Assembly: GCF_040938485.1 (NCBI RefSeq)
Contig: NW_027271846.1
Location: 620,001 to 684,000, forward strand
Direction: 5' to 3'
Length of the DNA stretch: 64,000 nucleotides
From: Diadema antillarum
Lineage: Eukaryota
Position 1 is the first letter of the stretch. Every line of letters starts with the position of its first letter. The translations under genes and the position numbers were made by a program. Shown piece by piece: positions 39,801 through 63,057 of this stretch. The notes beneath the pieces were generated by a model. It was not told the origin of the DNA. It saw only the letters and a list, made by a program, of their open reading frames with translations, and ran no database searches.

Positions 39801-42800
39801 CCGCATCTTGTAAGTACGGCAAGGCAATGGCGTCATCACCGACATTATGTCCATTGGTTTCTTTTAAAGACATTTCAAACAAGTCTCGTGTATAGTCGAT
39901 GATTTTAGCAATTACTGCCGCCTCTTGAAATATGTCGCTGCTAAGACGTCACAACTCGATCTGCGATGTTTCGACCGGAAGGTTATAATGAATTAGTTTC
40001 TTGATTCCGTAAAAATCATAAATTCAGTGAAGATTTCAGTGCAGTTCATAGGGAAACTTGTGACGCAATGGCAACATCACTTCATCTGATTTCAGTACAC
40101 ATGTATTGTGATTTGGACCAATACACGTGTATAACCCAATTTACCGTGAATGTATAAGTTTCAAATTTCATAATGTCATTATGCGCGTGTAAAATTCCAT
40201 AGAATATTCCTACCATTCCATTGGTTTAATTTCATTTAATGTAACTAACTTCAATCACTTTTACTTGAACGTTCTATCTTTGACTTGACGCAAGTACTTG
40301 TCTTGTTTTCGTGTCCAATTTAAGTTTGCTGTCCGCGGAAAATCAGGGAAGCATTTCCATCCTGTAGAAAGATTGCGGGTAGGGATGAGATGATACGCTA
40401 AGTTACGCATCTCTTCGATTCCACTGCCTCAGACCTTCTTTACATCTTCCATTATGGGTGTTTAATCCGTCAAGTACGCCCTCCATCCTCCATCTCCCCC
40501 CCCCCCCCCCCTCCCCCCTCCCGTCATCCATCCACTCCTGGTGTTTTTTACCCCCCACCAATGACTCTCATCAGAGGCTGGCTGTCTGCGTCACCAGCCC
40601 ATCGCGTCGAGTACTGCCCCGTGGGCCGTCGTGTTCAGCGCTGCCATTCCAGCCTGGCTGGATTAACTTGGTACACACCAAATACTCGCAGCCCTTCCAT
40701 CCCTTCCTCCTATACCTCCTTGTACAGTGTACATACCGACATGATGCTGGAGGAACGGTGGTGTGGTGAGAGCAACTCGCTTCACAGAGCAACCCCGGTG
40801 TAGCTGGCTCTCCCCGGGGCGAAAATGATAAAAAGAAAGATACCTACACACGCAATAGACTGACTGAAAGAGAGGGAAAGGAGAAGGGGATGGGGAGACA
40901 GACAGACAGAAAAAACAGACAGACAGACAGACAGACAGACAAGCAGGGATGGTGGGAGAGAGATATGAGAGAAGGGAAAAAAAGGGGGGGTGAGACTCAG
41001 AGGTGTTAGGGTATGTACGAATGAGATGTAATGAACAATTAGTTTCTTGATGCCCTGCGGTGTAACAGCTTTAGCATTACGTCGATGCGCGGTACATAAC
41101 ACACCCATCACCACAAAAGTGCAGAAACATGCACTCACATTTAAACATGCTAACACACGTCACATCCATAAATAAAGCACGTTTATTATCAGGTATGACT
41201 GCCAGGCCTTTAGCGTTTCTTGTGTCTACATTGTACACTTGGCCTATATATAAATAGTATAAACTAATATAAAGTATCCTTGACTTTGATCCTACAGCAA
41301 TTCGACTTTGTCGACTCATACTTCTCTTAATACTTCTGTACCTTGTTCCTTTAATAGGAATGAATAGTACAAGCCCTGCTGTTTAGCTTTCGCTCCCGAA
41401 ATGCATCTTTGCTTTAAAACCTATCATAGTGTGTATTTAAACTAAATTTTGCCATATGTGTAAAATATACATATATACATATTTTTTTTCCGGTAACATG
41501 ATATGCTTTGAACATTTAAATATATCAAAAAAATGGTAAATGGAATAAATGAAATGAAATGAAATGAAATGTAAGGTAATGAAATGCTATCAAATGAAAT
41601 AAAATTTCATACGTGGATGGCACACTATTAGAAAATCCAGGTCCTGCATTCCAGACCCTGTTTTTCTTTTCTTTCTTTTTTTGTCGTGTTTGTTTTCACA
41701 TCCGTCCACATACTCGTCAACGAAACTTGTAATGAGTTGTATAGTTTTTTGTTTTGTTTTGTTCTATTCCTTCCCATACACTGTCCAGTTTAAGTTCCTT
41801 TGCGATTTAAATTGAACAATAGAATCAAATGAATAATCTGCAGCATATAGTATCTTATGTTTTTATGTTACACACTAGTATCCGCAATCATAATACTATA
41901 AATGTATAATATGATCTGATTATATGTTTCCTTATTTTGTATTCTCTTTCTTTCTCTTTTCCTTCATCTTCCTCCAGGACGAACGGAATCAGATTTTGAC
42001 GACCAATGTATGGATTGAACAGGTGAGATGAAGTTTAAACAGAAAAAAAAAAACAAATCACATAAACAAAACGAACACAAAACATGAAAGAAACAACAAA
42101 AATTTCAAAACGCCTTTTGATGAATTATGATGAGAATATACCCGTGGGATATCAAATATAAAAAAGTCACAAACATAATAAATTCTGACTAAAATGTGTC
42201 AAAGATTCTGATTGGCCCAAGGAAGTTAAGAGCTGGCATTTATAGTGTTAATCTGCAAAATAATTTCCAAAAGTTCAAAAGTGATGGCATGATTACTTTC
42301 AATATTTTGCTCAGCAATAAGAGCATCTGCATCCTCTATGACGGAAGGCTATTACCACTTTGTCGATATGGGTGACCACGTGACATCTCCGCGTGCTCAC
42401 GAAGATGATGCTACATCTCATCATTAAAGCACACCAACACATGATTTGTGAATAAAGCATGGGCCCAGAGGGAGCTATCCCACCACTGCGTAATAGCCGG
42501 TGAGGGCATCTATTGCGAACATCAAAAAGAGGGCGCCATAACGTTATCTTAAGATACCACCTGATGAGACGGGAAGGGGGGGGGGGGGGGGGGGTAATTG
42601 AACACCTTCCTCAGTCTGGACATAGCACCGGAGTCGTTGCAAACAAGACTGGTTACCGGCACTGAAATGAAGGAGACATTATAGCCGCAACGTTCCATGA
42701 AACATTCAATCATATGGGATAACAGATACACACTCCACTGGCATGCAATCGAAGGGAAACGGTAATTACGCTGTGCAAACGGGAAATGTGCGAGTACAGT

Positions 42801-45800
42801 GTATAAGAATTCAAAAGGGTATTGTACTTTTTTAAACTTGAGGGCATTTTGCGGAAAATGTACATTTTTTATAATCAATTTTTCACTGAAGGTCACGAGA
42901 CAAATGTTTCTGGATAGCTGCATTGCAAGGTAGGTTTTAGTAAACATTTAAATACTTTCCTTCAAGTGATTAAAAAAATTAGATGCACTAAGAGAGCCCA
43001 AACCTCCGCCAAGTCAACAGTATCACACTTGCCAAGAACTGTGAACGAATCACGAGTTTGATCTTAATCATCATTATCCGGATCACCACCCAAAGCAGAA
43101 AAAAAAAAATCGGATGCTCCTTTTTCCATAACAGACGTATCCTCAAAACTTCACCCAAATATGCCGATATCTTTTCGAGTAATATAGCTAACATTCATAC
43201 TAGGAAATAAACAAACGCCGGCAATGACATAAAGTTTGAGGAGGCACATGATGGTATTTCCGAAATAGTCGCTGACATCCTCGTAATCTGTTCTTATTGA
43301 TCTGTTTCGTCACATTCAGCATTGGCACGACGAAAAATTGGTCTGGGATCCAGACGCCTATGAAGGAATCAACATTCTGAGGATTCCCGCCACTGAAATC
43401 TGGATTCCTGACGTCACACTTTACGACAAGTAAGTATATTGACCGGACCGGGTCCAAGTCGTCTGATCTTGAGGAAGCGAACGAATTCCTTGAGAGCGCT
43501 AATGTGAGAACATGATTATAAGTCCATGTGATCCATGATAAAGAATACTGTAATGGTTAACTTTAAGAGCCTGCAGCTTTAAACACAAGTGAGAGTATTT
43601 TGGAGGACCTCAACCAGGAACCAAAAGCCAACAACTCATTCCTCCTAAAGTAATTGTCAATGAAAGCTATTAAAGTTAGAGCTACAGACCAGAGAAAATG
43701 AAACGAACAAACCTTTTTTGAACGATGTGAACAATTCAATTCAATTCAATTCAATTCAATTCAATTCAATTCAATTCAATTCAATTCAATTCAATTCAAT
43801 TCAATTCAATTCAATGCATTAACTCTTGTGTCTGCTTAACGTGACTAACTAGAGCTCTATTCAGACATCAGAAGTGACTTTCATTTTGCTCAAACAAACG
43901 AGGTTCCCATTTCAGGTGGAGTTTGTTTGTGGCAGTCAGGTATTGTCAGGTGACCGATTTCACTTGCCCACAAATAAATCGTGAAATCTGACTCAACATT
44001 GAATGTTCTTCATTAATACTCCGATATTGAATCTCCCCTGTGGTATCAAGTTTTTTAAATGTATGATAAAATTAATTTCAGGCAGACTGAGATTCGCTTT
44101 GAAAAAAAAAAGAAAAGACACAAATATTTGATACATTCAATTTCGCTGACGATTCCCAAACGCAGACATAATTAAATACTAAGTTGCTGTATTGTTTGTC
44201 GAGGAGTGTACATACTGATATCTCCGATCATCGAACACAATTTGTAAATAATGTTGAAAATGAAAGCGATGGATGGGAGATGGAGTTCTAAAGTTAAGAT
44301 GAATCTCACTTCAAACAAAGCTGTGGTTATCAGAGAGGTACATTTTGCGGAATGTATCTGAAATTAGACCACATGGCACTGATATAAGCTTATCGATAAA
44401 TTGCGATCCTTTCATCATTTTTTATGTCTTCTTCTTTCACCTGTCTTTGAATGAGATAAAGATGTTTGAAGTGCCGCATATGGACGGACAAGTTATATAA
44501 TGTTTTCTTAGGAAATGTTGCATACATCATACTTTTAATAATATCATTTGTCATATCACGAACACACTTTGAATAGCACTGGTTAATGTGACTTCTACGA
44601 AGACTCTTTTTCATTACTGACACGACATCTAGCCCCAGGTGGTACATGTCGACTGAATTGTTAATGGCATCAAACGGGGTCGAACGTCGTTCGCTCCGTG
44701 CGTGCTCCCCATAATTGATGCGATATGGCTGTGCGGTGTGTGAGTTGCTGTGAGCATGTTCGGGTGATGTGACACCTGCTTTTCGTATTCATTCCTACCA
44801 CCTTCTCACTCACTGCTTGAGATCGGTTTTGAAGACATTAGTACAGAGGCGAGGTTCACGTCAAAATGACTTTGCCGATAGACTTTAAGGTGTAAGAGCA
44901 GATCAAAGCGCGTGTGTAGGTTGGGAAAACAAAACCCGTCTCCAGATAAATAGTAAATGAACAATGCAAAATGATGTCATCTAGTAGCTGTAAAATAATG
45001 GTAGTATAATTATTACTTTTTGAGTCTCATTTCTTGACAGTCAGGACTGTAACAGGTGAACTTTGACCGAGAAGTAATAAAAAGAATGTGTGCAAGCAGC
45101 TTCACACGTATACAAGGCAAGTTGAGGAGAATGTTAAGGTAACATTCAGTTTGAACGTTTTATTGTAGGGCATCAAAAAGCTACACAGTTGGATTCACCT
45201 GCTCAAAGGGCGCCTACACGTTTCTTCACTGAAAGTTGGCTGGTCAAAAAGGGTTCGCATCTTTCAACAGCTTGGAATGTATAAAGCTTCAGCAAAAATA
45301 TAGATTCATCGGAACATTATAAATTCGCACTTTCTCGATCTTCAACTTGCGGTATACAATACTTATACTGTAGTCATGAGAACGTAATTGTCATTGTTTC
45401 TCTTTTTTGTTGTTTCTTGCTCATCAACCTCAGCGCTGATTCCAATGACTATGTGGCCCATAGTCGCTCTTCAAACGCCCTGGTGAACTACAACGGCAAC
45501 GTTGACCTCTGGTCCAAGCCCACGCTGGTCAAGAGCACCTGCAAGATCGACGTCAAGTTCTTCCCCTTCGACGAGCAGATGTGCTCGATGAAGTTTGGCT
45601 CCTGGACCTATAACAGTTTCCAGATGAACCTCGACAAGCACACCGATGACCCCGACCTCTCGACGTTCGTGGCGAACGAACAGTGGCACATGAAGTACGC
45701 CGTGTCGCGACGTCACAACGTGAAGTACGAATGCTGCCCAGAGCGCTACCACGACGTCACGTTCTACATCGGTCTCAAGCGCAAACCGCTTTACTACATC

Positions 45801-47797
45801 TACAACCTCGTCATGCCCTGTATCCTCCTCTCCTCGCTATCCATGCTCGGCTTCTTCATGCCCTACGACGTCGGCGTCGTCAAGGTGTCGCTCAGCGTCA
45901 CGCTCATCCTCTCGCTCACCGTCTTCTTGCTGCTCGTCGCCGAGATGATGCCGCGGACGTCGGAGGAGGTGCCGCTTATAGGTAAGCGGCTGTAAAACAG
46001 TCTAGCTCCTTGGAAGTCTGGGCAATTATGTAACACAGCCACATAACGTTCAACATAAACCCATGTGCCAAGCCTTTTGTTGTTGTTGTTGTTTGCCGTA
46101 TTTTCCTTTGCTCATTGCTTCTTGTCAATTTCAGATTATTATCCGGATGACAGAAACGGGCATAATTCTGACAGAGATGAAATGCTAATCTGTTGCTGCA
46201 AGATACTATCCTTGCCATAGTAATCGTCGCTTGTCTAATGAATTGACTCCTATTTAGAATTTGAATAAGTGCTTGGTACTGAAAAATCGGAAAATAGCAT
46301 TCACAACAGACTTTTAGNNNNNNNNNNNNNNNNNNNNNNNNNNNNNNNNNNNNNNNNNNNNNNNNNNNNNNNNNNNNNNNNNNNNNNNNNNNNNNNNNNN
46401 NNNNNNNNNNNNNNNNNNNNNNNNNNNNNNNNNNNNNNNNNNNNNNNNNNNNNNNNNNNNNNNNNNNNNNNNNNNNNNNNNATAGCTTATGATAGAAATA
46501 CACAATCAGGGTTTTTTTTAAATCAAAAGTAACAATTACCGACTACAAACTATGTTTGCCTTTGATAGGCAGATGGAAGAGGTTGGAACATCTGAAGACC
46601 AAATTAACGATATCCAATTAACTCTAATGAGCAACATTGCTGTTTCATATCATAATTTGATAAATACTGATCTGTTCATGAATACACTGTGTCCGACGAA
46701 ATGTGTTGGACAGTTGAAAAGCATATGCTTCCGTAAAAGGGAAACCACACTGAGATAACACATTATCAATGAAAGTCCTTGATTTCCTGTTGGAAATTTT
46801 TTCATACCACTGAAGTGTCACTGTGCCTGTCTGGACTGGTTTTCGTTAATTTCTAAATCCCCAATCGTAACACTTGGTTAATACACATTTCTCTTTTCGA
46901 GACAGTCGGAACGTAGTTCAGATGCTTTAACAATACGATTGAGATATAGTTACGTAACATTCCTTGTCCTTTCACCTATGTTGCCAGTTTCGAGTCATCA
47001 TAAGTGGGTATGAATCGCAGTTCTGGAGTGACAATAATTAAAATCCGTGCTCGGAAAAACTGCCGATATTAGGTTTATCAAAATTTGCCTTAGCATTTAT
47101 ACCAATATCTGTGCTTACCATTGCAGGTCAATATTACGCGGCCACTATGTTCCTCATTTCACTCTCGACGGCGATGAATGTGCTAGTGCTCAACGTGAAC
47201 CAGCGTGGTAAGATCGAAGGCCAGGACGTGCCCCGGTGGCTGCGCATCATCGCACTCGACTACGCGGCCAAACTGCTCTGCGTCACACCCTGCACGGGCA
47301 ACTCCTCGCGTCGGTCCGGACGCGATGCGTCCGACTACCGGCAGTACGCCGGTCACTACTCATCGCAGAATCATCACGTGACCTTCAACGGCACGCATCA
47401 ACGCATGGAAAGCAACGCGCATGGCACGCTAAATACATACGGCCAGGCGCTCAGCCGCAACAGCATGCACGTGCGATTCGGCACCGCCACGTCCCCGGCG
47501 CCTACCGAGTCCGATATGCTGTTGGAGGACCGCGATGTTAGCGGAGGAGAACTGGAAACTATGCAAGAAAAGCGCCTGGCGCGGCTTGAAAGAACAGTCA
47601 CCGATATATTAAAGCACATGAAAACTCTACAAAAGAGGCGAGAACGACAAAACCAGCTTAAGTCGGACTGGGGCAAAGTGGCGCAGGTTCTAGACAGAGT
47701 GTTGCTGCTTGTCTTTGTGCTTTGTACTATGGCAACGGCATTGGTTTTACTGCTCAGGAGATCACCGGGTGTGCTAGCGCCACCAGACGACGAATGA
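30212..47797 (+). CDS. CHRNA9/10-like: Nicotinic acetylcholine receptor alpha subunit, alpha9/alpha10-like; join(30212..30348,41978..42022,43320..43429,45434..45981,47127..47797); 5'-partial (signal-peptide exon not located)
   Basis: Five GT-AG bounded exons join in frame (phases 1,0,0,2,1) to 502 aa. Cys-loop CKIDVKFFPFDEQMC (C-x13-C, 45540-45584), loop B GSWTY, loop C KYECCPERY with vicinal Cys (45732-45737; defines an alpha subunit), M1-M3, intracellular loop, MA/M4 (DWGKVAQVLDR), TGA at 47795-47797. The PLIG|xYY junction matches vertebrate CHRNA9/10 as recalled. Confidence 0.95.
30911..31101 (-). mobile_element. Degenerate tRNA-derived (CORE-like) SINE
   Basis: Minus strand reads GGGGCACTGTGG..TAGTGAATAAG..TTCGAT (tRNA-like head), CTCAACCCAGGTGTAAAT (CORE-like) and a CTACCCTGGGTA tail. 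Confidence 0.55.
33703..33813. repeat. (GAAT/GGAT)n tetranucleotide array
   Basis: Seen directly; a similar (CTGA)/(TGAA)n array lies at 38480-38612. Confidence 0.9.
35382..35466. repeat. (TCTG/TCTA)n array
   Basis: Seen directly; a complementary (ACAG)n array lies at 40895-40942. Confidence 0.9.
38171..38274. repeat. Two-copy tandem duplication, period 54 bp
   Basis: TTGCGACACTCRGCTTGTCATATCCGTTG at 38171 and 38225. Confidence 0.9.
41978..42022 (+). CDS. CHRNA9/10-like: nAChR 45-nt exon: DERNQILTTNVWIEQ
   Basis: Long CT tract + cctccag acceptor, GTGAG donor; the classic 45-nt nAChR exon with DE.NQ.L.TN.W. Confidence 0.95.
43320..43429 (+). CDS. CHRNA9/10-like: nAChR 110-nt exon: HWHDEKLVWDPDAYEGINILRIPATEIWIPDVTLYD(N)
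   Basis: attcag acceptor, GTAAG donor; the classic 110-nt exon with W.D..L.WDP..Y.G and IW.PD..LY (loop A). Confidence 0.95.
43733..43815. repeat. (AATTC)n pentanucleotide array, about 16 units
   Basis: Seen directly. Confidence 0.97.
45434..45981 (+). CDS. CHRNA9/10-like: nAChR exon: Cys-loop, loops B and C, M1, M2, M2-M3 loop (ADSNDY...EEVPLIG)
   Basis: cctcag acceptor, GTAAG donor, 548 nt open frame matching ORF 45417..45995; strongly C-ending codon usage. Confidence 0.97.
47127..47797 (+). CDS. CHRNA9/10-like: nAChR last coding exon: M3, intracellular loop, MA helix, M4, stop
   Basis: ttgcag acceptor; QYYAATMFLISLSTAMNVLVLNV (M3) ... DWGKVAQVLDRVLLLVFVLCT (MA/M4); matches ORF 47111..47797. 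Confidence 0.96.
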
Positions 47798-61900: not shown

Positions 61901-63057
61901 CAATATAGGTCAAAAATCAAGGTCAAAGGTCAAAGAAGTCAAAGGTCAAAATTCTGTGTAGAAGTTTTGAAGCCCTCACCTAGTGCCATCACATAAAGCA
62001 AGCGGAATTGAAATCGGGTTAGAAATGGCGAAGGAGTAGCATTTTGAAGCAAAATGTACAATATAGGTCAAAGGTCAAGGTCAAAGGTCACAACTGAAAT
62101 TCTGTGTAGAAGTTTCAAAGCTCCCATGTAGTGCTATCATATAAAGCAAACAGAATCAAAATCGGGTTAGAAATGGCGAAGGAGTAGCAAATTGAACATT
62201 TTGATCACACACGGACGCACAGACGGACGGACGGACGGACGGACAGACGGACAGACGGACGGACACACAGACACACACACGTACGGAGCCCGTTTCATAG
62301 TCCCCTGCTCGAACTCATTCGGCGGGGACAAAAAAATTCACCTTCATAATCTGGATCTGATTTTCTTGCAGTTCCTCAAGCTCTTTCTTTGAAGATGAAA
62401 TGGAGCACATCAGATCCAGCGTCACCCTTGAATTAGCCATAGTCGACAGCTTCAGCTCCGCACTTTTGTTTGTTGTCATGGAAAACAGAATGGCTGCCTC
62501 ACTACGGAAGGTCTAAAGATTACTCAAGTTCCCCCCCCCCCCCCCATTTACCTGTTGCTGAAGTTGTTGTTGGGTTTTTCTCTTCTTTTTTTTTTGGAAG
62601 AGGGACATTCAAACCAAGGGCCCTCCTCTCAGCCCTGATTACATCTCATTTCTGAGAAGCCTGATACTATAAAAACACATATCATTTTTTTTTTTCTCGT
62701 GAGCATAATATCAGAATGATGAACAATGCAAATGTACATTTTATTTTCAATTCTTCCCTGACCAGTATAACAGCCTCAACACATGTCAGTATTTTTTTTT
62801 TTCAATCAACATTCCACACAAGCATGCAAATAAACTGTGCTATGCACGAAATACGTTTAGGTTGGTTTGAATATAGAAGTATTAATTGTTCTGTACTTGA
62901 ATTTTCCAGAAGAGAGAATTTGTGCATTCAAAAATGAATTGTACACTACATAGTTATAAAAAAAGTAAAAATCTTATCTATGCAATTTCACATTGTTTTC
63001 ATAACATAGGATACATCTTCAGAATGAAGTCATTGATGGTTGGAAAAGGAGATTCAC
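54172..63057 (-). CDS. SIX6OS1-like: SIX6OS1/C14orf39-like coiled-coil protein (putative synaptonemal-complex central element), 5'-partial; complement(join(54172..54404,55569..55629,56560..56628,57421..57602,57954..58062,58810..59043,59739..60189,60876..60973,62342..62510,63015..63057))
   Basis: Ten exons join to one open 548-aa frame; all junctions are GT-AG except 63015/62510. ESPFPTINDFILKI..FRSE resembles human SIX6OS1 PAPFPSLTKWTLNIVNLRCE (recalled, not aligned). It is followed by a coiled coil, a long S/P-rich disordered region, F-rich motifs (KSPGSEFSYSF, GFSLNF) and a C-terminal FCLF* (human QFTFF*). Confidence in coding is higher than confidence in orthology. Confidence 0.6.
54897..55290. 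mobile_element. 386-bp palindromic MITE with TTAA target-site duplication (Kolobok/T2-like or piggyBac-like)
   Basis: TTAA|AGGGATGGTACAGTATTGGT ... ACCAGAACTATACGATCCCT|TTAA; the interior is an imperfect palindrome centred on AAAGTGTGGGTCCCACACTTT (about 55090-55110). Confidence 0.85.
55569..55629 (-). CDS. SIX6OS1-like exon MEKDSRQSNYCTGPKAMLGD
   Basis: ttgtttgtttcag acceptor, GTAAGC donor, 61 nt, phase 0 to 1, fits both neighbours. Confidence 0.75.
55918..56002. repeat. (ATC)n microsatellite
   Basis: Seen directly. Confidence 0.95.
56560..56628 (-). CDS. SIX6OS1-like exon DEHMTLDSSSFQENPFFSTMFGM
   Basis: gcttttcag acceptor, GTATGT donor, 69 nt, phase 0-0. Confidence 0.75.
57421..57602 (-). 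CDS. SIX6OS1-like exon GYPYTPK...KSPGSEFSYSFRPMFDETIQESGTK
   Basis: NAGNAG acceptor (CAG CAG, start 57602 or 57599), GTGGGA donor; lies within ORF 57334..57615. Confidence 0.65.
57954..58062 (-). CDS. SIX6OS1-like exon PSPSRDPMPEEMDFDSSSQPSVISDVGATGDFEMGE
   Basis: GTAGGT donor is clear. The acceptor (gaaaag) was chosen because it restores phase; an upstream aattag acceptor at 58092 would be out of phase. Confidence 0.55.
58810..59043 (-). CDS. SIX6OS1-like exon DPQHFAMSSSS...PGGDAQ
   Basis: ctctttgttag acceptor, GTAAGC donor, 234 nt, phase 0-0; GC-rich; overlaps ORF 58747..59025. Confidence 0.8.
59739..60189 (-). CDS. SIX6OS1-like exon RKGQENKSSNQPGMYKFGQ...AGRAAT
   Basis: tttatctag acceptor, GTAGGC donor, 451 nt, phase 2 to 0; overlaps ORF 59658..60149. 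Confidence 0.8.
60876..60973 (-). CDS. SIX6OS1-like coiled-coil exon KAEEEKQLAEAEKKRKEQEKIQREKAQQEELA(R)
   Basis: ttaaag acceptor, GTAAAG donor, 98 nt, phase 0 to 2; charged helical sequence. Confidence 0.8.
61379..62331 (-). mobile_element. Non-autonomous Helentron-associated element (HINE / DINE-1 / pearl-like) with internal tandem array
   Basis: 11-bp subterminal inverted repeats TGTCCCCGCCG (61405-61415 and 62320-62330); a short IR partner GTCCCCTGC (62300-62308); a (GACG/GACA)n microsatellite at 62210-62280; five core repeats; a terminal hairpin ATTACGCAGTGCGTAAT (61385-61401); T-rich flanks on the minus strand and no TSD. Confidence 0.85.
61419..62190. repeat. Tandem array of five 144-159 bp units inside the HINE
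   Basis: Units begin at GTAGCA at 61419, 61578, 61722, 61879, 62036 (next at 62184). Length differences come from the number of (A)GGTCAA heptamers. Confidence 0.95.
62342..62510 (-). CDS. SIX6OS1-like exon FRSEAAILFSM...KKELEELQENQIQIMK
   Basis: Open frame ending at a GTGAAT donor (phase 0). The 5' boundary is ambiguous: AG at 62514-62513 or AC at 62512-62511. Confidence 0.7.
63015..63057 (-). CDS. SIX6OS1-like exon GESPFPTINDFILK(I)
   Basis: ttctctttgtttag acceptor; donor GTATCCT (U12-like); carries the PFP motif. Confidence 0.6.

What the first reader, a model, noticed from the sequence alone, without database searches (positions are those of the whole stretch)
45861..45953. nAChR alpha subunit with a rewired ion-selectivity filter (G-V-V-K instead of G-E-K): candidate ACh-gated anion or Ca-impermeable channel
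Seen: the M1-M2 linker and M2 read P-Y-D-V-G-V-V-K-V-S-L-S-V-T-L-I-L-S-L-T-V-F-L-L-L-V-A-E-M-M-P. The near-invariant -1' Glu (GEK in alpha7/alpha9) is Val and the linker is one residue longer (tandem GTC GTC at 45876-45881). The agonist site is intact (loop A Y, loop B W, loop C Y-x-CC-x3-Y), and the MA helix is basic (KHMKTLQKRRERQNQLK). Established: in alpha7 mutagenesis (Galzi, Corringer, Changeux and colleagues), neutralising -1' Glu removes Ca permeability. Adding a linker insertion (Pro) plus V13'T inverts selectivity to anions. Natural nAChR-derived chloride channels are known in Lymnaea and Schistosoma. Inference: this may be an independent, probably deuterostome, origin of an inhibitory nicotinic receptor with a non-Pro solution. 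Caveats: the inserted residue is Val, V13' and E20' are cation-type, and partner subunits may supply Glu.
Basis: partly seen in the sequence, partly recalled or inferred. Interest (0 to 1): 0.85.

Follow-up and report, generated by a model that had tools for sequence, protein, structure and literature searches.

The report
Sea-urchin nicotinic receptor lacking cation filter
A sea-urchin acetylcholine-receptor gene really has two valines where nearly all relatives have the glutamate that selects for cations, and the change is conserved across echinoderms and acorn worms together with other positive charges along the ion path, so it may be an acetylcholine-gated chloride channel, which no one has yet tested.

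Summary
Window 45861-45953 encodes P-Y-D-V-G-V-V-K...; Val-Val (GTC GTC, 45876-45881) replaces the single -1' Glu of G-E-K.

The five-exon gene (30212-47797, + strand) is 100% identical to the annotated 'alpha-10-like' protein of Diadema antillarum.

It is not an assembly error or a recent slip. All 30 aligned clade members (48 clade sequences and fragments among those fetched), from 11 echinoderm and 3 hemichordate species, carry V-V/I-K. Lytechinus and another relative use different Val codons. The carriers sit on one side of a 100/100 branch. GEK paralogs from the same animals lie on the other side.

Three further clade-specific shifts point the same way:
- 24' is Arg/Lys in 30/30 clade members (Pro/Ala in the others).
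- The -5' Asp is no longer conserved.
- The MA helix has a net charge of +5.2, against -1.6 in the others.

The acetylcholine-binding aromatic residues and the loop C Cys-Cys pair are intact.

An anion-selective ACh-gated channel with a Val-Val rather than Pro-Ala filter is plausible (about 45%) but untested. E20', V13' and an acidic extracellular ring remain cation-type.

I found no paper on this clade in the held library.

The parts
30212..30348 (+). First identifiable coding exon (annotated ATG at 30214). Encodes ..MYGGNEQKLFEDLFRHYNKLVRPV.. Acceptor AG, donor GT. The signal-peptide exon upstream was not found.
41978..42022 (+). 45-nt exon DERNQILTTNVWIEQ (loop D Trp at 42011-42013)
43320..43429 (+). 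110-nt exon HWHDEKLVWDPD...WIPDVTLYD (loop A Tyr)
45434..45981 (+). 548-nt exon holding the Cys-loop (45540-45584), loop B (45594-45611), loop C with vicinal Cys (45723-45749), M1 (45786-45857), the M1-M2 linker and M2
45858..45884 (+). M1-M2 linker M-P-Y-D-V-G-V-V-K. Glu of the G-E-K motif is replaced by Val-Val.
45876..45881 (+). The two Val codons GTC GTC (-2' inserted position and -1')
45882..45944 (+). M2 pore helix from K0' to E20' (S2', T6', L9', V13', L16', E20')
45954..45956 (+). Arg at 24' (R/K in 30/30 clade members, P/A in 25/25 others)
47127..47797 (+). Last exon: M3, disordered cytoplasmic loop, MA helix, M4, stop codon
47555..47671 (+). MA helix (residues 423-461). The 34 residues before the conserved Trp carry a net charge of +7.

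Best explanation
SHOWN. The feature is the genuine M1-M2 linker and M2 helix of an intact five-exon gene. The gene is identical to the protein annotated 'neuronal acetylcholine receptor subunit alpha-10-like' of the sea urchin Diadema antillarum. It belongs to an old nAChR clade found only in Ambulacraria (echinoderms plus hemichordates). In this clade the intermediate-ring Glu (-1') was replaced by two valines, which makes the linker one residue longer. Further changes occur only in the clade: a basic residue at 24', loss of constraint on the cytoplasmic-ring Asp, and a charge-reversed, strongly basic MA helix. The ACh-binding aromatic box and the loop C Cys-Cys pair are kept.

INFERRED. The subunit forms ACh-gated or choline-type pentamers, either alone or with the second echinoderm subfamily that also carries V-V-K. 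The permeation path of such pentamers has lost its cation-attracting charges and gained positive ones. V-2'/V-1'/K0' would then play the part of P-2'/A-1'/R0' in glycine and GABA-A receptors, or of the Pro-Ala in molluscan and flatworm nicotinic chloride channels. The channel would conduct anions (inhibitory or shunting) rather than Na+/Ca2+. The confidence figure is for this anion reading. That the rewired filter is real and conserved is about 0.97.
For: Translation and the alpha7 alignment show one extra residue and E->V. The gene model has canonical splice sites and is 100% identical over 502 aa to P0177. 48 clade sequences and fragments among the 276 fetched carry the longer linker without an acidic -1', and all belong to this clade. 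The 217 other linker motifs scanned all have an acidic -1'. Named members come from 11 echinoderm and 3 hemichordate species. The clade is one side of a 100/100 branch with the linker and 24' columns left out, so the trait changed once (quick tree). The window's subfamily follows the species tree from crinoids to hemichordates. Val-Val is encoded GTC GTC here, GTG GTC in Lytechinus pictus and GTG GTA in another relative. Column counts: -2' V 30/30; -1' V29 I1 versus E 25/25; K0' in all; -5' D10 N13 S5 A2 versus D21 E2 N1 G1; 24' R25 K5 versus P18 A7. MA helix net charge is +5.2 (sd 2.0, n=29) versus -1.6 (sd 2.2, n=25). Loop A Tyr, loop B Trp and loop C Y-x-CC..Y are 30/30, and the window also has the loop D Trp. 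The AF2 model has mean pLDDT 80, with M2 starting at G-3' and a long MA-M4 helix. Its best structural matches are nAChR chains. Literature: the intermediate Glu ring sets almost the whole electrostatic potential at the narrow end of the nAChR pore (PMC2217203). Converting alpha7 and 5-HT3A to anion channels needed an insertion at exactly this place plus neutralising the Glu (PMC6800317). Natural nicotinic Cl- channels replace the Glu by Pro-Ala (PMC4055736). [quoted passage not shown]
Against: No electrophysiology exists for any member. E20' is kept in 26/30 and V13' in 30/30, and both are cation-type. In alpha7 the insertion plus E-1'A was non-functional without V13'T or L9'T (PMC6800317). 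The extracellular Asp that aligns with muscle alpha1 D97 is D/E in 29/30. Two rings of beta-branched Val might make a hydrophobic constriction of unknown conductance. The review read here describes ACh as the main excitatory transmitter at echinoderm muscle and records no inhibitory nicotinic response (PMC10603993). GEK subunits exist in the same genomes and could co-assemble. The charge comparisons are not phylogenetically independent.
Confidence: 0.45

Rival explanations
1. It is a cation channel with altered permeation. Without the -1' Glu ring and with basic MA portals it conducts monovalent cations poorly and Ca2+ hardly at all. This would resemble an alpha7 E237A-like filter combined with 5-HT3A-like low-conductance portals, giving a slow or weak excitatory or modulatory ACh response.
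For: E20', V13', L9' and the extracellular Asp ring are cation-type and conserved. In alpha7, E-1'A and V13'T without the insertion stay cationic (PMC6800317). Ring charge correlates with cation conductance rather than with a switch of sign (PMC2217203). From memory: 5-HT3A has basic MA residues and is still cationic.
Against: The insertion, the neutral -1', the lost -5' Asp, the R/K at 24' and an MA helix of +5 to +7 all shift the same way. A cation channel stripped of every attracting charge near its narrow end would be a very poor conductor. Yet the motif has stayed invariant since before the echinoderm/hemichordate split.
Confidence: 0.3
2. It is an obligate heteromer partner. The V-V-K subunits never form the whole ring. 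They co-assemble with GEK subunits, as the muscle gamma/epsilon subunits with Gln at -1' do, and merely tune conductance and Ca2+ permeability of an ordinary excitatory receptor.
For: GEK paralogs occur in the same species (P0203, P0210, P0211, P0229, P0248). One neutral position in the muscle intermediate ring is normal: four of five subunits contribute Glu (PMC2217203).
Against: The window's subfamily has complete principal and complementary binding faces, as homomer-forming alpha7 and alpha9 do. At least two old subfamilies both carry V-V-K. The echinoderm-only subfamily lacks the loop D Trp, which suggests partnership within the clade. A one-residue register shift in only some subunits of a ring would be structurally awkward (inference).
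Confidence: 0.17
3. It is gated by a ligand other than acetylcholine (choline, betaine or another quaternary amine), or it has no channel function, as a decoy or structural subunit would.
For: nAChR-type proteins with other ligands exist, for example the betaine receptor ACR-23 among the PDB matches. No ligand data exist for this clade.
Against: All five canonical aromatic positions and the vicinal Cys pair are present in the window's subfamily. The pore-lining 2', 6', 9', 13' and 16' residues are strictly conserved, as expected of a working channel.
Confidence: 0.07
4. It is an artefact: an assembly or sequencing error, a recent tandem GTC duplication, or a pseudogene.
For: The two Val codons are identical (GTC GTC).
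Against: The same V-V/I-K occurs in 48 clade sequences and fragments from at least 14 species, with other Val codons. The reading frame is intact, splice sites are canonical and the model is identical to an annotated protein. An independent sample of the same species label holds 53% of the sampled words of the stretch.
Confidence: 0.01

Closest known systems
Nicotinic-type ACh-gated chloride channels of Lymnaea stagnalis (van Nierop et al. 2005, cited in PMC4055736) and Schistosoma mansoni SmACC-1/2 (PMC4055736)
   Same: They are nAChR-family subunits, some alpha-type with YxCC. The single intermediate-ring Glu is replaced by two uncharged residues ahead of a basic 0' residue, so the linker is one residue longer.
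   Different: Those use Pro-Ala and this clade uses Val-Val. They are lophotrochozoan or flatworm proteins, while this clade was found only in echinoderms and hemichordates, which implies a separate origin. Their sequences could not be fetched, so neither a joint tree nor their MA-helix charge was tested. Anion selectivity was measured for Lymnaea and supported indirectly for SmACC. Nothing has been measured here.
Engineered anion-selective alpha7 (Galzi 1992; Corringer 1999) and 5-HT3A (Gunthorpe & Lummis 2001), as summarised in PMC6800317
   Same: A residue is inserted between the Gly and the -1' position, and the -1' Glu is neutralised. E20' is retained.
   Different: The mutants needed V13'T or L9'T to work, and this clade keeps V13' and L9'. 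The inserted residue is Val, not Pro. This clade adds R/K at 24' and a basic MA helix.
Glycine, GABA-A and GluCl receptors (P-2' A-1' R0' filter; PMC7385131, PMC9962794)
   Same: The linker has the same length between the conserved Asp and the basic 0' residue. The -2' and -1' residues are uncharged and 0' is basic. From memory: these receptors have a basic residue at 24' (the LPK motif), and GABA-A beta subunits have Ala-Ala-Arg, which shows Pro is not obligatory.
   Different: The branch of the superfamily, the binding site and M2 are different. In this clade M2 is otherwise nAChR-like (V13', E20'), and a long MA helix is present.
Vertebrate alpha9/alpha10 and alpha7 nAChR subunits (the names given by automatic annotation)
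   Same: These are the best-scoring relatives outside the clade in the profile search (about 400-420 bits against 626-854 inside). alpha7 is the best PDB sequence match. The fold and binding-site residues are the same.
   Different: All of them have G-E-K. In the tree, chordate alpha9/alpha10 group with the ambulacrarian GEK paralogs and not with this clade, so 'alpha-10-like' is a similarity label and not orthology.

Membership tests
Cys-loop pentameric ligand-gated channel, nAChR alpha-type subunit | Neur_chan_LBD plus Neur_chan_memb domains | tested here: met
   Pfam PF02931 at 2.3e-30, and PF02932 at 1e-15 and 1.9e-13, on the two large exons
Cys-loop pentameric ligand-gated channel, nAChR alpha-type subunit | Cys-loop C-x13-C and vicinal Cys pair in loop C (YxCC) | tested here: met
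   C133...C147 and Y195-E-C197-C198. All are invariant in 55 aligned sequences.
Cys-loop pentameric ligand-gated channel, nAChR alpha-type subunit | Aromatic box: loop A Tyr, loop B Trp, two loop C Tyr, loop D Trp | tested here: met
   Y95, W154, Y195, Y202 and W57 are present. The first four are 30/30 in the clade. Loop D Trp is 22/30, missing only in the echinoderm-only subfamily.
Cys-loop pentameric ligand-gated channel, nAChR alpha-type subunit | nAChR fold with four TM helices and an MA helix | tested here: met
   AF2 mean pLDDT 80, with helices 216-238, 244-268, 278-309 and 422-488. Foldseek top hits are alpha4beta2, alpha7 and muscle nAChR chains, TM by target 0.85-0.93.
Cation-selective nAChR (functional class) | Acidic residue at -1' (G-E-K intermediate ring) | tested here: not met
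   Val at -1' with an extra Val at -2'
Cation-selective nAChR (functional class) | Acidic extracellular ring at 20' | tested here: met
   E267. The clade has E26 Q3 D1.
Anion-selective pLGIC filter (Pro-Ala-Arg / Pro-Ala) | Linker one residue longer than in cationic channels, uncharged -2' and -1', basic 0' | tested here: met
   P-x-D-x-G-[VV]-K against P-x-D-x-G-[E]-K in the alignment
Anion-selective pLGIC filter (Pro-Ala-Arg / Pro-Ala) | The residues are Pro-Ala | tested here: not met
   Val-Val in 29/30 clade members and Val-Ile in 1/30
Anion-selective pLGIC filter (Pro-Ala-Arg / Pro-Ala) | Measured anion permeability | not testable with these tools
   Needs electrophysiology with ion substitution
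Vertebrate alpha9/alpha10 orthology group | Falls inside the alpha9/alpha10 clade in a tree | tested here: not met
   Chordate alpha9/alpha10 plus amphioxus CHRNA9 group with the ambulacrarian GEK paralogs. The V-V-K proteins lie on the other side of a 100/100 branch. The root was not inferred.
Lymnaea/Schistosoma nicotinic chloride-channel clade | Shared ancestry with those subunits | not tested
   Their sequences were not obtainable here. No non-ambulacrarian protein reached the clade's score range in the profile search.

The most novel reading that the evidence does not exclude
Before echinoderms and hemichordates split, deuterostomes independently evolved a family of ACh-gated anion channels from nicotinic receptors. 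They did so with a Val-Val rather than a Pro-Ala filter, together with co-evolved basic cytoplasmic portals (MA helix) and a basic 24' residue. This would be the first inhibitory ionotropic ACh receptor family in deuterostomes, and a natural test case for which residues really set charge selectivity.
Probability: 0.4. Interest if true: 0.85.

Novelty: new variant of a known kind. Interest (0 to 1): 0.65.

Why it matters
Charge selectivity decides whether a transmitter excites or inhibits. In nicotinic receptors it has been attributed mainly to the -1' Glu and the length of the M1-M2 linker, largely from engineered mutants. This clade is a natural variant, conserved since before the echinoderm/hemichordate split, with the same two changes made in a different chemical way (Val-Val). 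It also carries charge reversals at 24' and in the MA helix.

If the channel is anionic, echinoderms and hemichordates would have fast inhibitory cholinergic transmission. The echinoderm muscle review read here says no general inhibitory transmitter has been identified (PMC10603993). It would also show that Pro is dispensable in the filter.

If the channel is cationic, it would show that insertion plus neutralisation is not enough in a natural background, which is equally informative for models of selectivity.

The genes are already in the databases as 'alpha-9/alpha-10-like'. The finding therefore costs only cloning and oocyte recording to test.

Tried and rejected
No letters of that stretch were sent to any search tool afterwards. 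There is no read or cDNA evidence.

2. Assembly error or recent GTC slip. Rejected on cross-species conservation with different Val codons.

3. Pseudogene. Rejected: the frame is intact, all four introns are GT-AG and the model is identical to an annotated protein.

4. Signal-peptide exon. A motif scan, tblastn with ortholog N-termini and tblastx against 10 kb upstream of the Lytechinus pictus ortholog found nothing convincing.

5. Other genes near the finding. Ten further long ORFs of the window had no Pfam match.

6. The protein-atlas search gave only generic nAChR clusters.

7. Earlier scan notes. Only an unrelated note on 54172-63057 turned up, and there was nothing on nicotinic receptors.

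8. Literature. van Nierop 2005 (PMC6725845) and Cymes & Grosman 2016 (PMC5111664) are not held. Searches for papers on echinoderm or hemichordate nAChR selectivity returned nothing relevant.

9. The sequences of the Lymnaea and Schistosoma anion subunits could not be obtained, so there is no joint tree and no comparison of their MA charge.

10. The look-up of encoding contigs gave no organism for the closest unnamed fragments and no record for the Asterias ortholog.
Full report
**1. The observation**

The two valines are GTC GTC at 45876-45881.

The enclosing 548-nt exon matches Pfam Neur_chan_LBD (2.3e-30) and Neur_chan_memb (1e-15). Its best solved-structure relative is human alpha7 (E 1.5e-47). 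There the alignment reads ADSG-EKISLGIT against YDVGVVKVSLSVT.

The conserved P-x-D-x-G and the Lys at 0' anchor both sides of this stretch. The difference is therefore precisely 'Glu replaced by Val-Val': one extra residue and loss of the -1' charge.

**2. The gene**

Five coding exons on the + strand give a continuous frame. All four introns have GT-AG borders.

| Exon | Coordinates |
|---|---|
| first found | 30212-30348 |
| second | 41978-42022 |
| third | 43320-43429 |
| fourth | 45434-45981 |
| last | 47127-47797 |

The N-run at 46318-46481 lies in the last intron.

The 502-residue product from the ATG at 30214 is 100% identical to P0177, 'neuronal acetylcholine receptor subunit alpha-10-like [Diadema antillarum]'. 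The window is therefore sea-urchin DNA and the gene is already annotated.

That model has no signal peptide. Orthologs read ...EFA(L/M)YGGNEQ after a signal peptide, so the annotated Met is internal and a 5' exon is missing. I could not find it.

An AlphaFold2 model built on a 52-sequence alignment has mean pLDDT 80. It shows M1 at 216-238, M2 at 244-268 (starting at Gly -3'), M3 at 278-309 and one long MA-M4 helix at 422-488. Its best structural matches are alpha4beta2, alpha7 and muscle nAChR chains, with TM by target 0.85-0.93.

**3. The change is not an error: it marks a clade**

A full HMMER scan of 1.84 billion representatives with the exon gave several hits carrying G-V-V-K.

A profile of these hits, searched against 5.8 billion proteins, separated two groups:
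- The clade scores 626-854 bits for full-length proteins and 464-501 bits for fragments.
- Everything else scores 421 bits or less. This group includes vertebrate alpha9/alpha10, lophotrochozoan subunits and GEK paralogs from the same animals.
- The only exceptions are double-length fused gene models.

Named members come from 14 species:
- Echinoids: Diadema antillarum, D. setosum, Lytechinus pictus, L. variegatus, Strongylocentrotus purpuratus.
- Asteroids: Asterias amurensis, Patiria miniata, Acanthaster planci.
- Holothurian: Apostichopus japonicus.
- Crinoids: Antedon mediterranea, Anneissia japonica.
- Enteropneust hemichordates: Ptychodera flava, Saccoglossus kowalevskii, Glandiceps talaboti.

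Among the 276 fetched proteins I scanned the linker motifs. 48 clade sequences and fragments carry the longer linker without an acidic -1', and all belong to this clade. All 217 other linker motifs have an acidic -1'.

In a maximum-likelihood tree of 55 proteins, the 30 V-V-K proteins form one side of a branch. Support is 100% SH-aLRT in the quick tree. It is 100/100 in the careful tree with the linker and 24' columns removed. One change of the trait suffices.

The window's subfamily has one ortholog each in crinoids, echinoids, holothurians, asteroids and the three hemichordates, branching as the species do. The change therefore predates the echinoderm/hemichordate split.

A second subfamily is echinoderm-only. 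Hemichordates have further expansions.

Val-Val is encoded GTC GTC in the window, GTG GTC in Lytechinus pictus and GTG GTA in an unnamed relative. The amino acids are conserved, not the DNA repeat.

**4. Other changes that go with it** (30 clade members against 25 others)

| Position | Clade | Others |
|---|---|---|
| -2' | V 30 | gap 25 |
| -1' | V 29, I 1 | E 25 |
| 0' | K 30 | K 25 |
| -5' (cytoplasmic-ring Asp) | D 10, N 13, S 5, A 2 | D 21, E 2, N 1, G 1 |
| -4' | V/I | S/A/T/C |
| -6' | Y/F | A/P/S |
| 24' | R 25, K 5 | P 18, A 7 |

These positions do not differ between the groups: S/N2', T6', L9', V13', L16', and E20' (the clade has E26 Q3 D1).

For the MA helix I counted the 34 residues before the conserved Trp. 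Net charge is +5.2 (sd 2.0, n=29) in the clade and +7 in the window. It is -1.6 (sd 2.2, n=25) in the others. The Mann-Whitney p is 1e-9, but the sequences are related, so this is descriptive only.

The segment that reads EEED in the ambulacrarian GEK paralogs reads KRRER here.

Every charge that changed thus moved in the positive direction, at four separate places along the ion path.

**5. Ligand site**

Loop A Tyr, loop B Trp, loop C Y-x-CC...Y and the Cys-loop are invariant in the clade. Loop D Trp is present in the window's subfamily and in the hemichordate groups. It is replaced by H, Q or I in the echinoderm-only subfamily.

This pattern resembles a pair in which one subunit supplies both binding faces and the other only the principal one. 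Heteromers within the clade are therefore plausible, and because both partners carry V-V-K the ring would have no Glu.

**6. Mechanism**

Established knowledge:
- The Glu ring accounts for nearly all the negative potential at the narrow end of the open nAChR pore. It is -230 mV with four Glu and rises by +57 mV for each Glu removed (PMC2217203).
- alpha7 and 5-HT3A became anion-selective after an insertion at this very place plus neutralisation of the Glu, together with V13'T or L9'T. The insertion with only one of the other changes was non-functional (PMC6800317).
- The nicotinic chloride channels of Lymnaea and Schistosoma replace the Glu by Pro-Ala (PMC4055736).
- In GlyR, Pro-2' and Ala-1' line the lumen, Arg0' determines anion selectivity, and linker length matters (PMC7385131).

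Inference: V-2'/V-1'/K0' has the same geometry as P-2'/A-1'/R0'. With the added positive charges, an anion-preferring ACh-gated channel is the single most likely reading. I put it at about 45%.

Evidence against: E20', V13' and the extracellular Asp ring stay cation-type. A double Val ring may behave differently from Pro-Ala. No inhibitory nicotinic response is recorded in the echinoderm muscle review I read (PMC10603993).

Rivals:
- a low-conductance, Ca2+-impermeable cation channel (about 30%);
- a tuning subunit in heteromers with GEK partners (about 17%);
- another ligand or no channel function (about 7%);
- an artefact (about 1%).

**7. Comparison and novelty**

The protein is a member of the nAChR alpha-type family by domains, Cys-loop, vicinal Cys, aromatic box and fold. 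It fails the defining acidic -1' of the cation-selective class.

It meets the length and charge pattern of the anion filter but not its Pro-Ala residues.

It is not an ortholog of vertebrate alpha9/alpha10. In the tree those group with the ambulacrarian GEK paralogs.

I found no paper in the held library that describes this clade or its filter. That does not prove none exists.

I rate it a new variant of a known kind: a natural, non-Pro solution at the charge-selectivity filter in deuterostomes. The sequence feature is solid. The physiology is unknown but easy to test.

Noticed in passing
window 30212-30216 and upstream: The annotated protein (P0177, 502 aa) starts at a Met that is internal in orthologs, which read ...EFA[L/M]YGGNEQ after a signal peptide. 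The exon begins in phase with one base supplied from upstream. A 5' signal-peptide exon is therefore missing from the model, and I did not find it within the window. The Lytechinus pictus model has the same truncated start.
   Followed up: partly
P0186, P0188 (holothurian type), P0187 (Glandiceps), P0009 (Saccoglossus), P0052 (Antedon): N-terminal 20-85 residues: Several clade members carry a small Cys-rich module (C-x2-GEVFDP-x3-KC-x2-C-x2-IC-x-F-P-x4-C-x2-C) between the signal peptide and the ligand-binding domain. No counterpart was found upstream in the window by tblastn.
   Followed up: partly
P0163 (Diadema setosum, 976 aa): The echinoid subfamily-2 V-I-K subunit is annotated as one protein with immunoglobulin domains (PF07679, PF13895, PF13927, PF00047) in front of the receptor. 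This may be a merged gene model or a real fusion.
   Followed up: no
P0167, P0052, P0015, P0164, P0155, P0178, P0174, P0179: The echinoderm-only V-V-K subfamily has lost the loop D Trp (it is H, Q or I) while keeping loops A, B and C. This suggests it needs a partner for the complementary face.
   Followed up: partly
P0169, P0019, P0199, P0200 (VAQMMP) and P0006, P0152 (VSQTMP): Some hemichordate paralogs have also lost the 20' Glu (it is Gln). P0006 and P0152 have a strongly diverged M2 (GVMLLLSLGVFNLQVSQ).
   Followed up: no
P0198, P0201 (Rodentolepis/Hymenolepis tapeworms); P0043, P0060 (unnamed metagenomic): Other natural linker variants turned up among the fetched nAChR-type proteins. The tapeworm subunits have S-G-G-K, with Gly at -1' and no insertion. 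The two unnamed proteins have G-S-I-D-K and D-S-I-E-K, in which the acid at -1' is kept.
   Followed up: no
window 46064-46102: A TTG-rich stretch in the last intron tripped the reads tool's filter. It was left alone afterwards.
   Followed up: no
window 16155-16361, 24617-24781, 30442-30625, 31176-31340, 35133-35293, 35774-35937, 46318-46481: There are seven runs of N, 161-207 bases each, all outside the coding exons of this gene. They were not filled.
   Followed up: no
window 41978-42022 and 43320-43429 versus 45434-45981: The 45-nt and 110-nt exons have, from memory, the same sizes as the corresponding exons of vertebrate alpha7-type genes. The 548-nt exon, in contrast, joins the region from the Cys-loop to M2, which is split over several exons in vertebrates. 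I did not check this against a vertebrate record.
   Followed up: no
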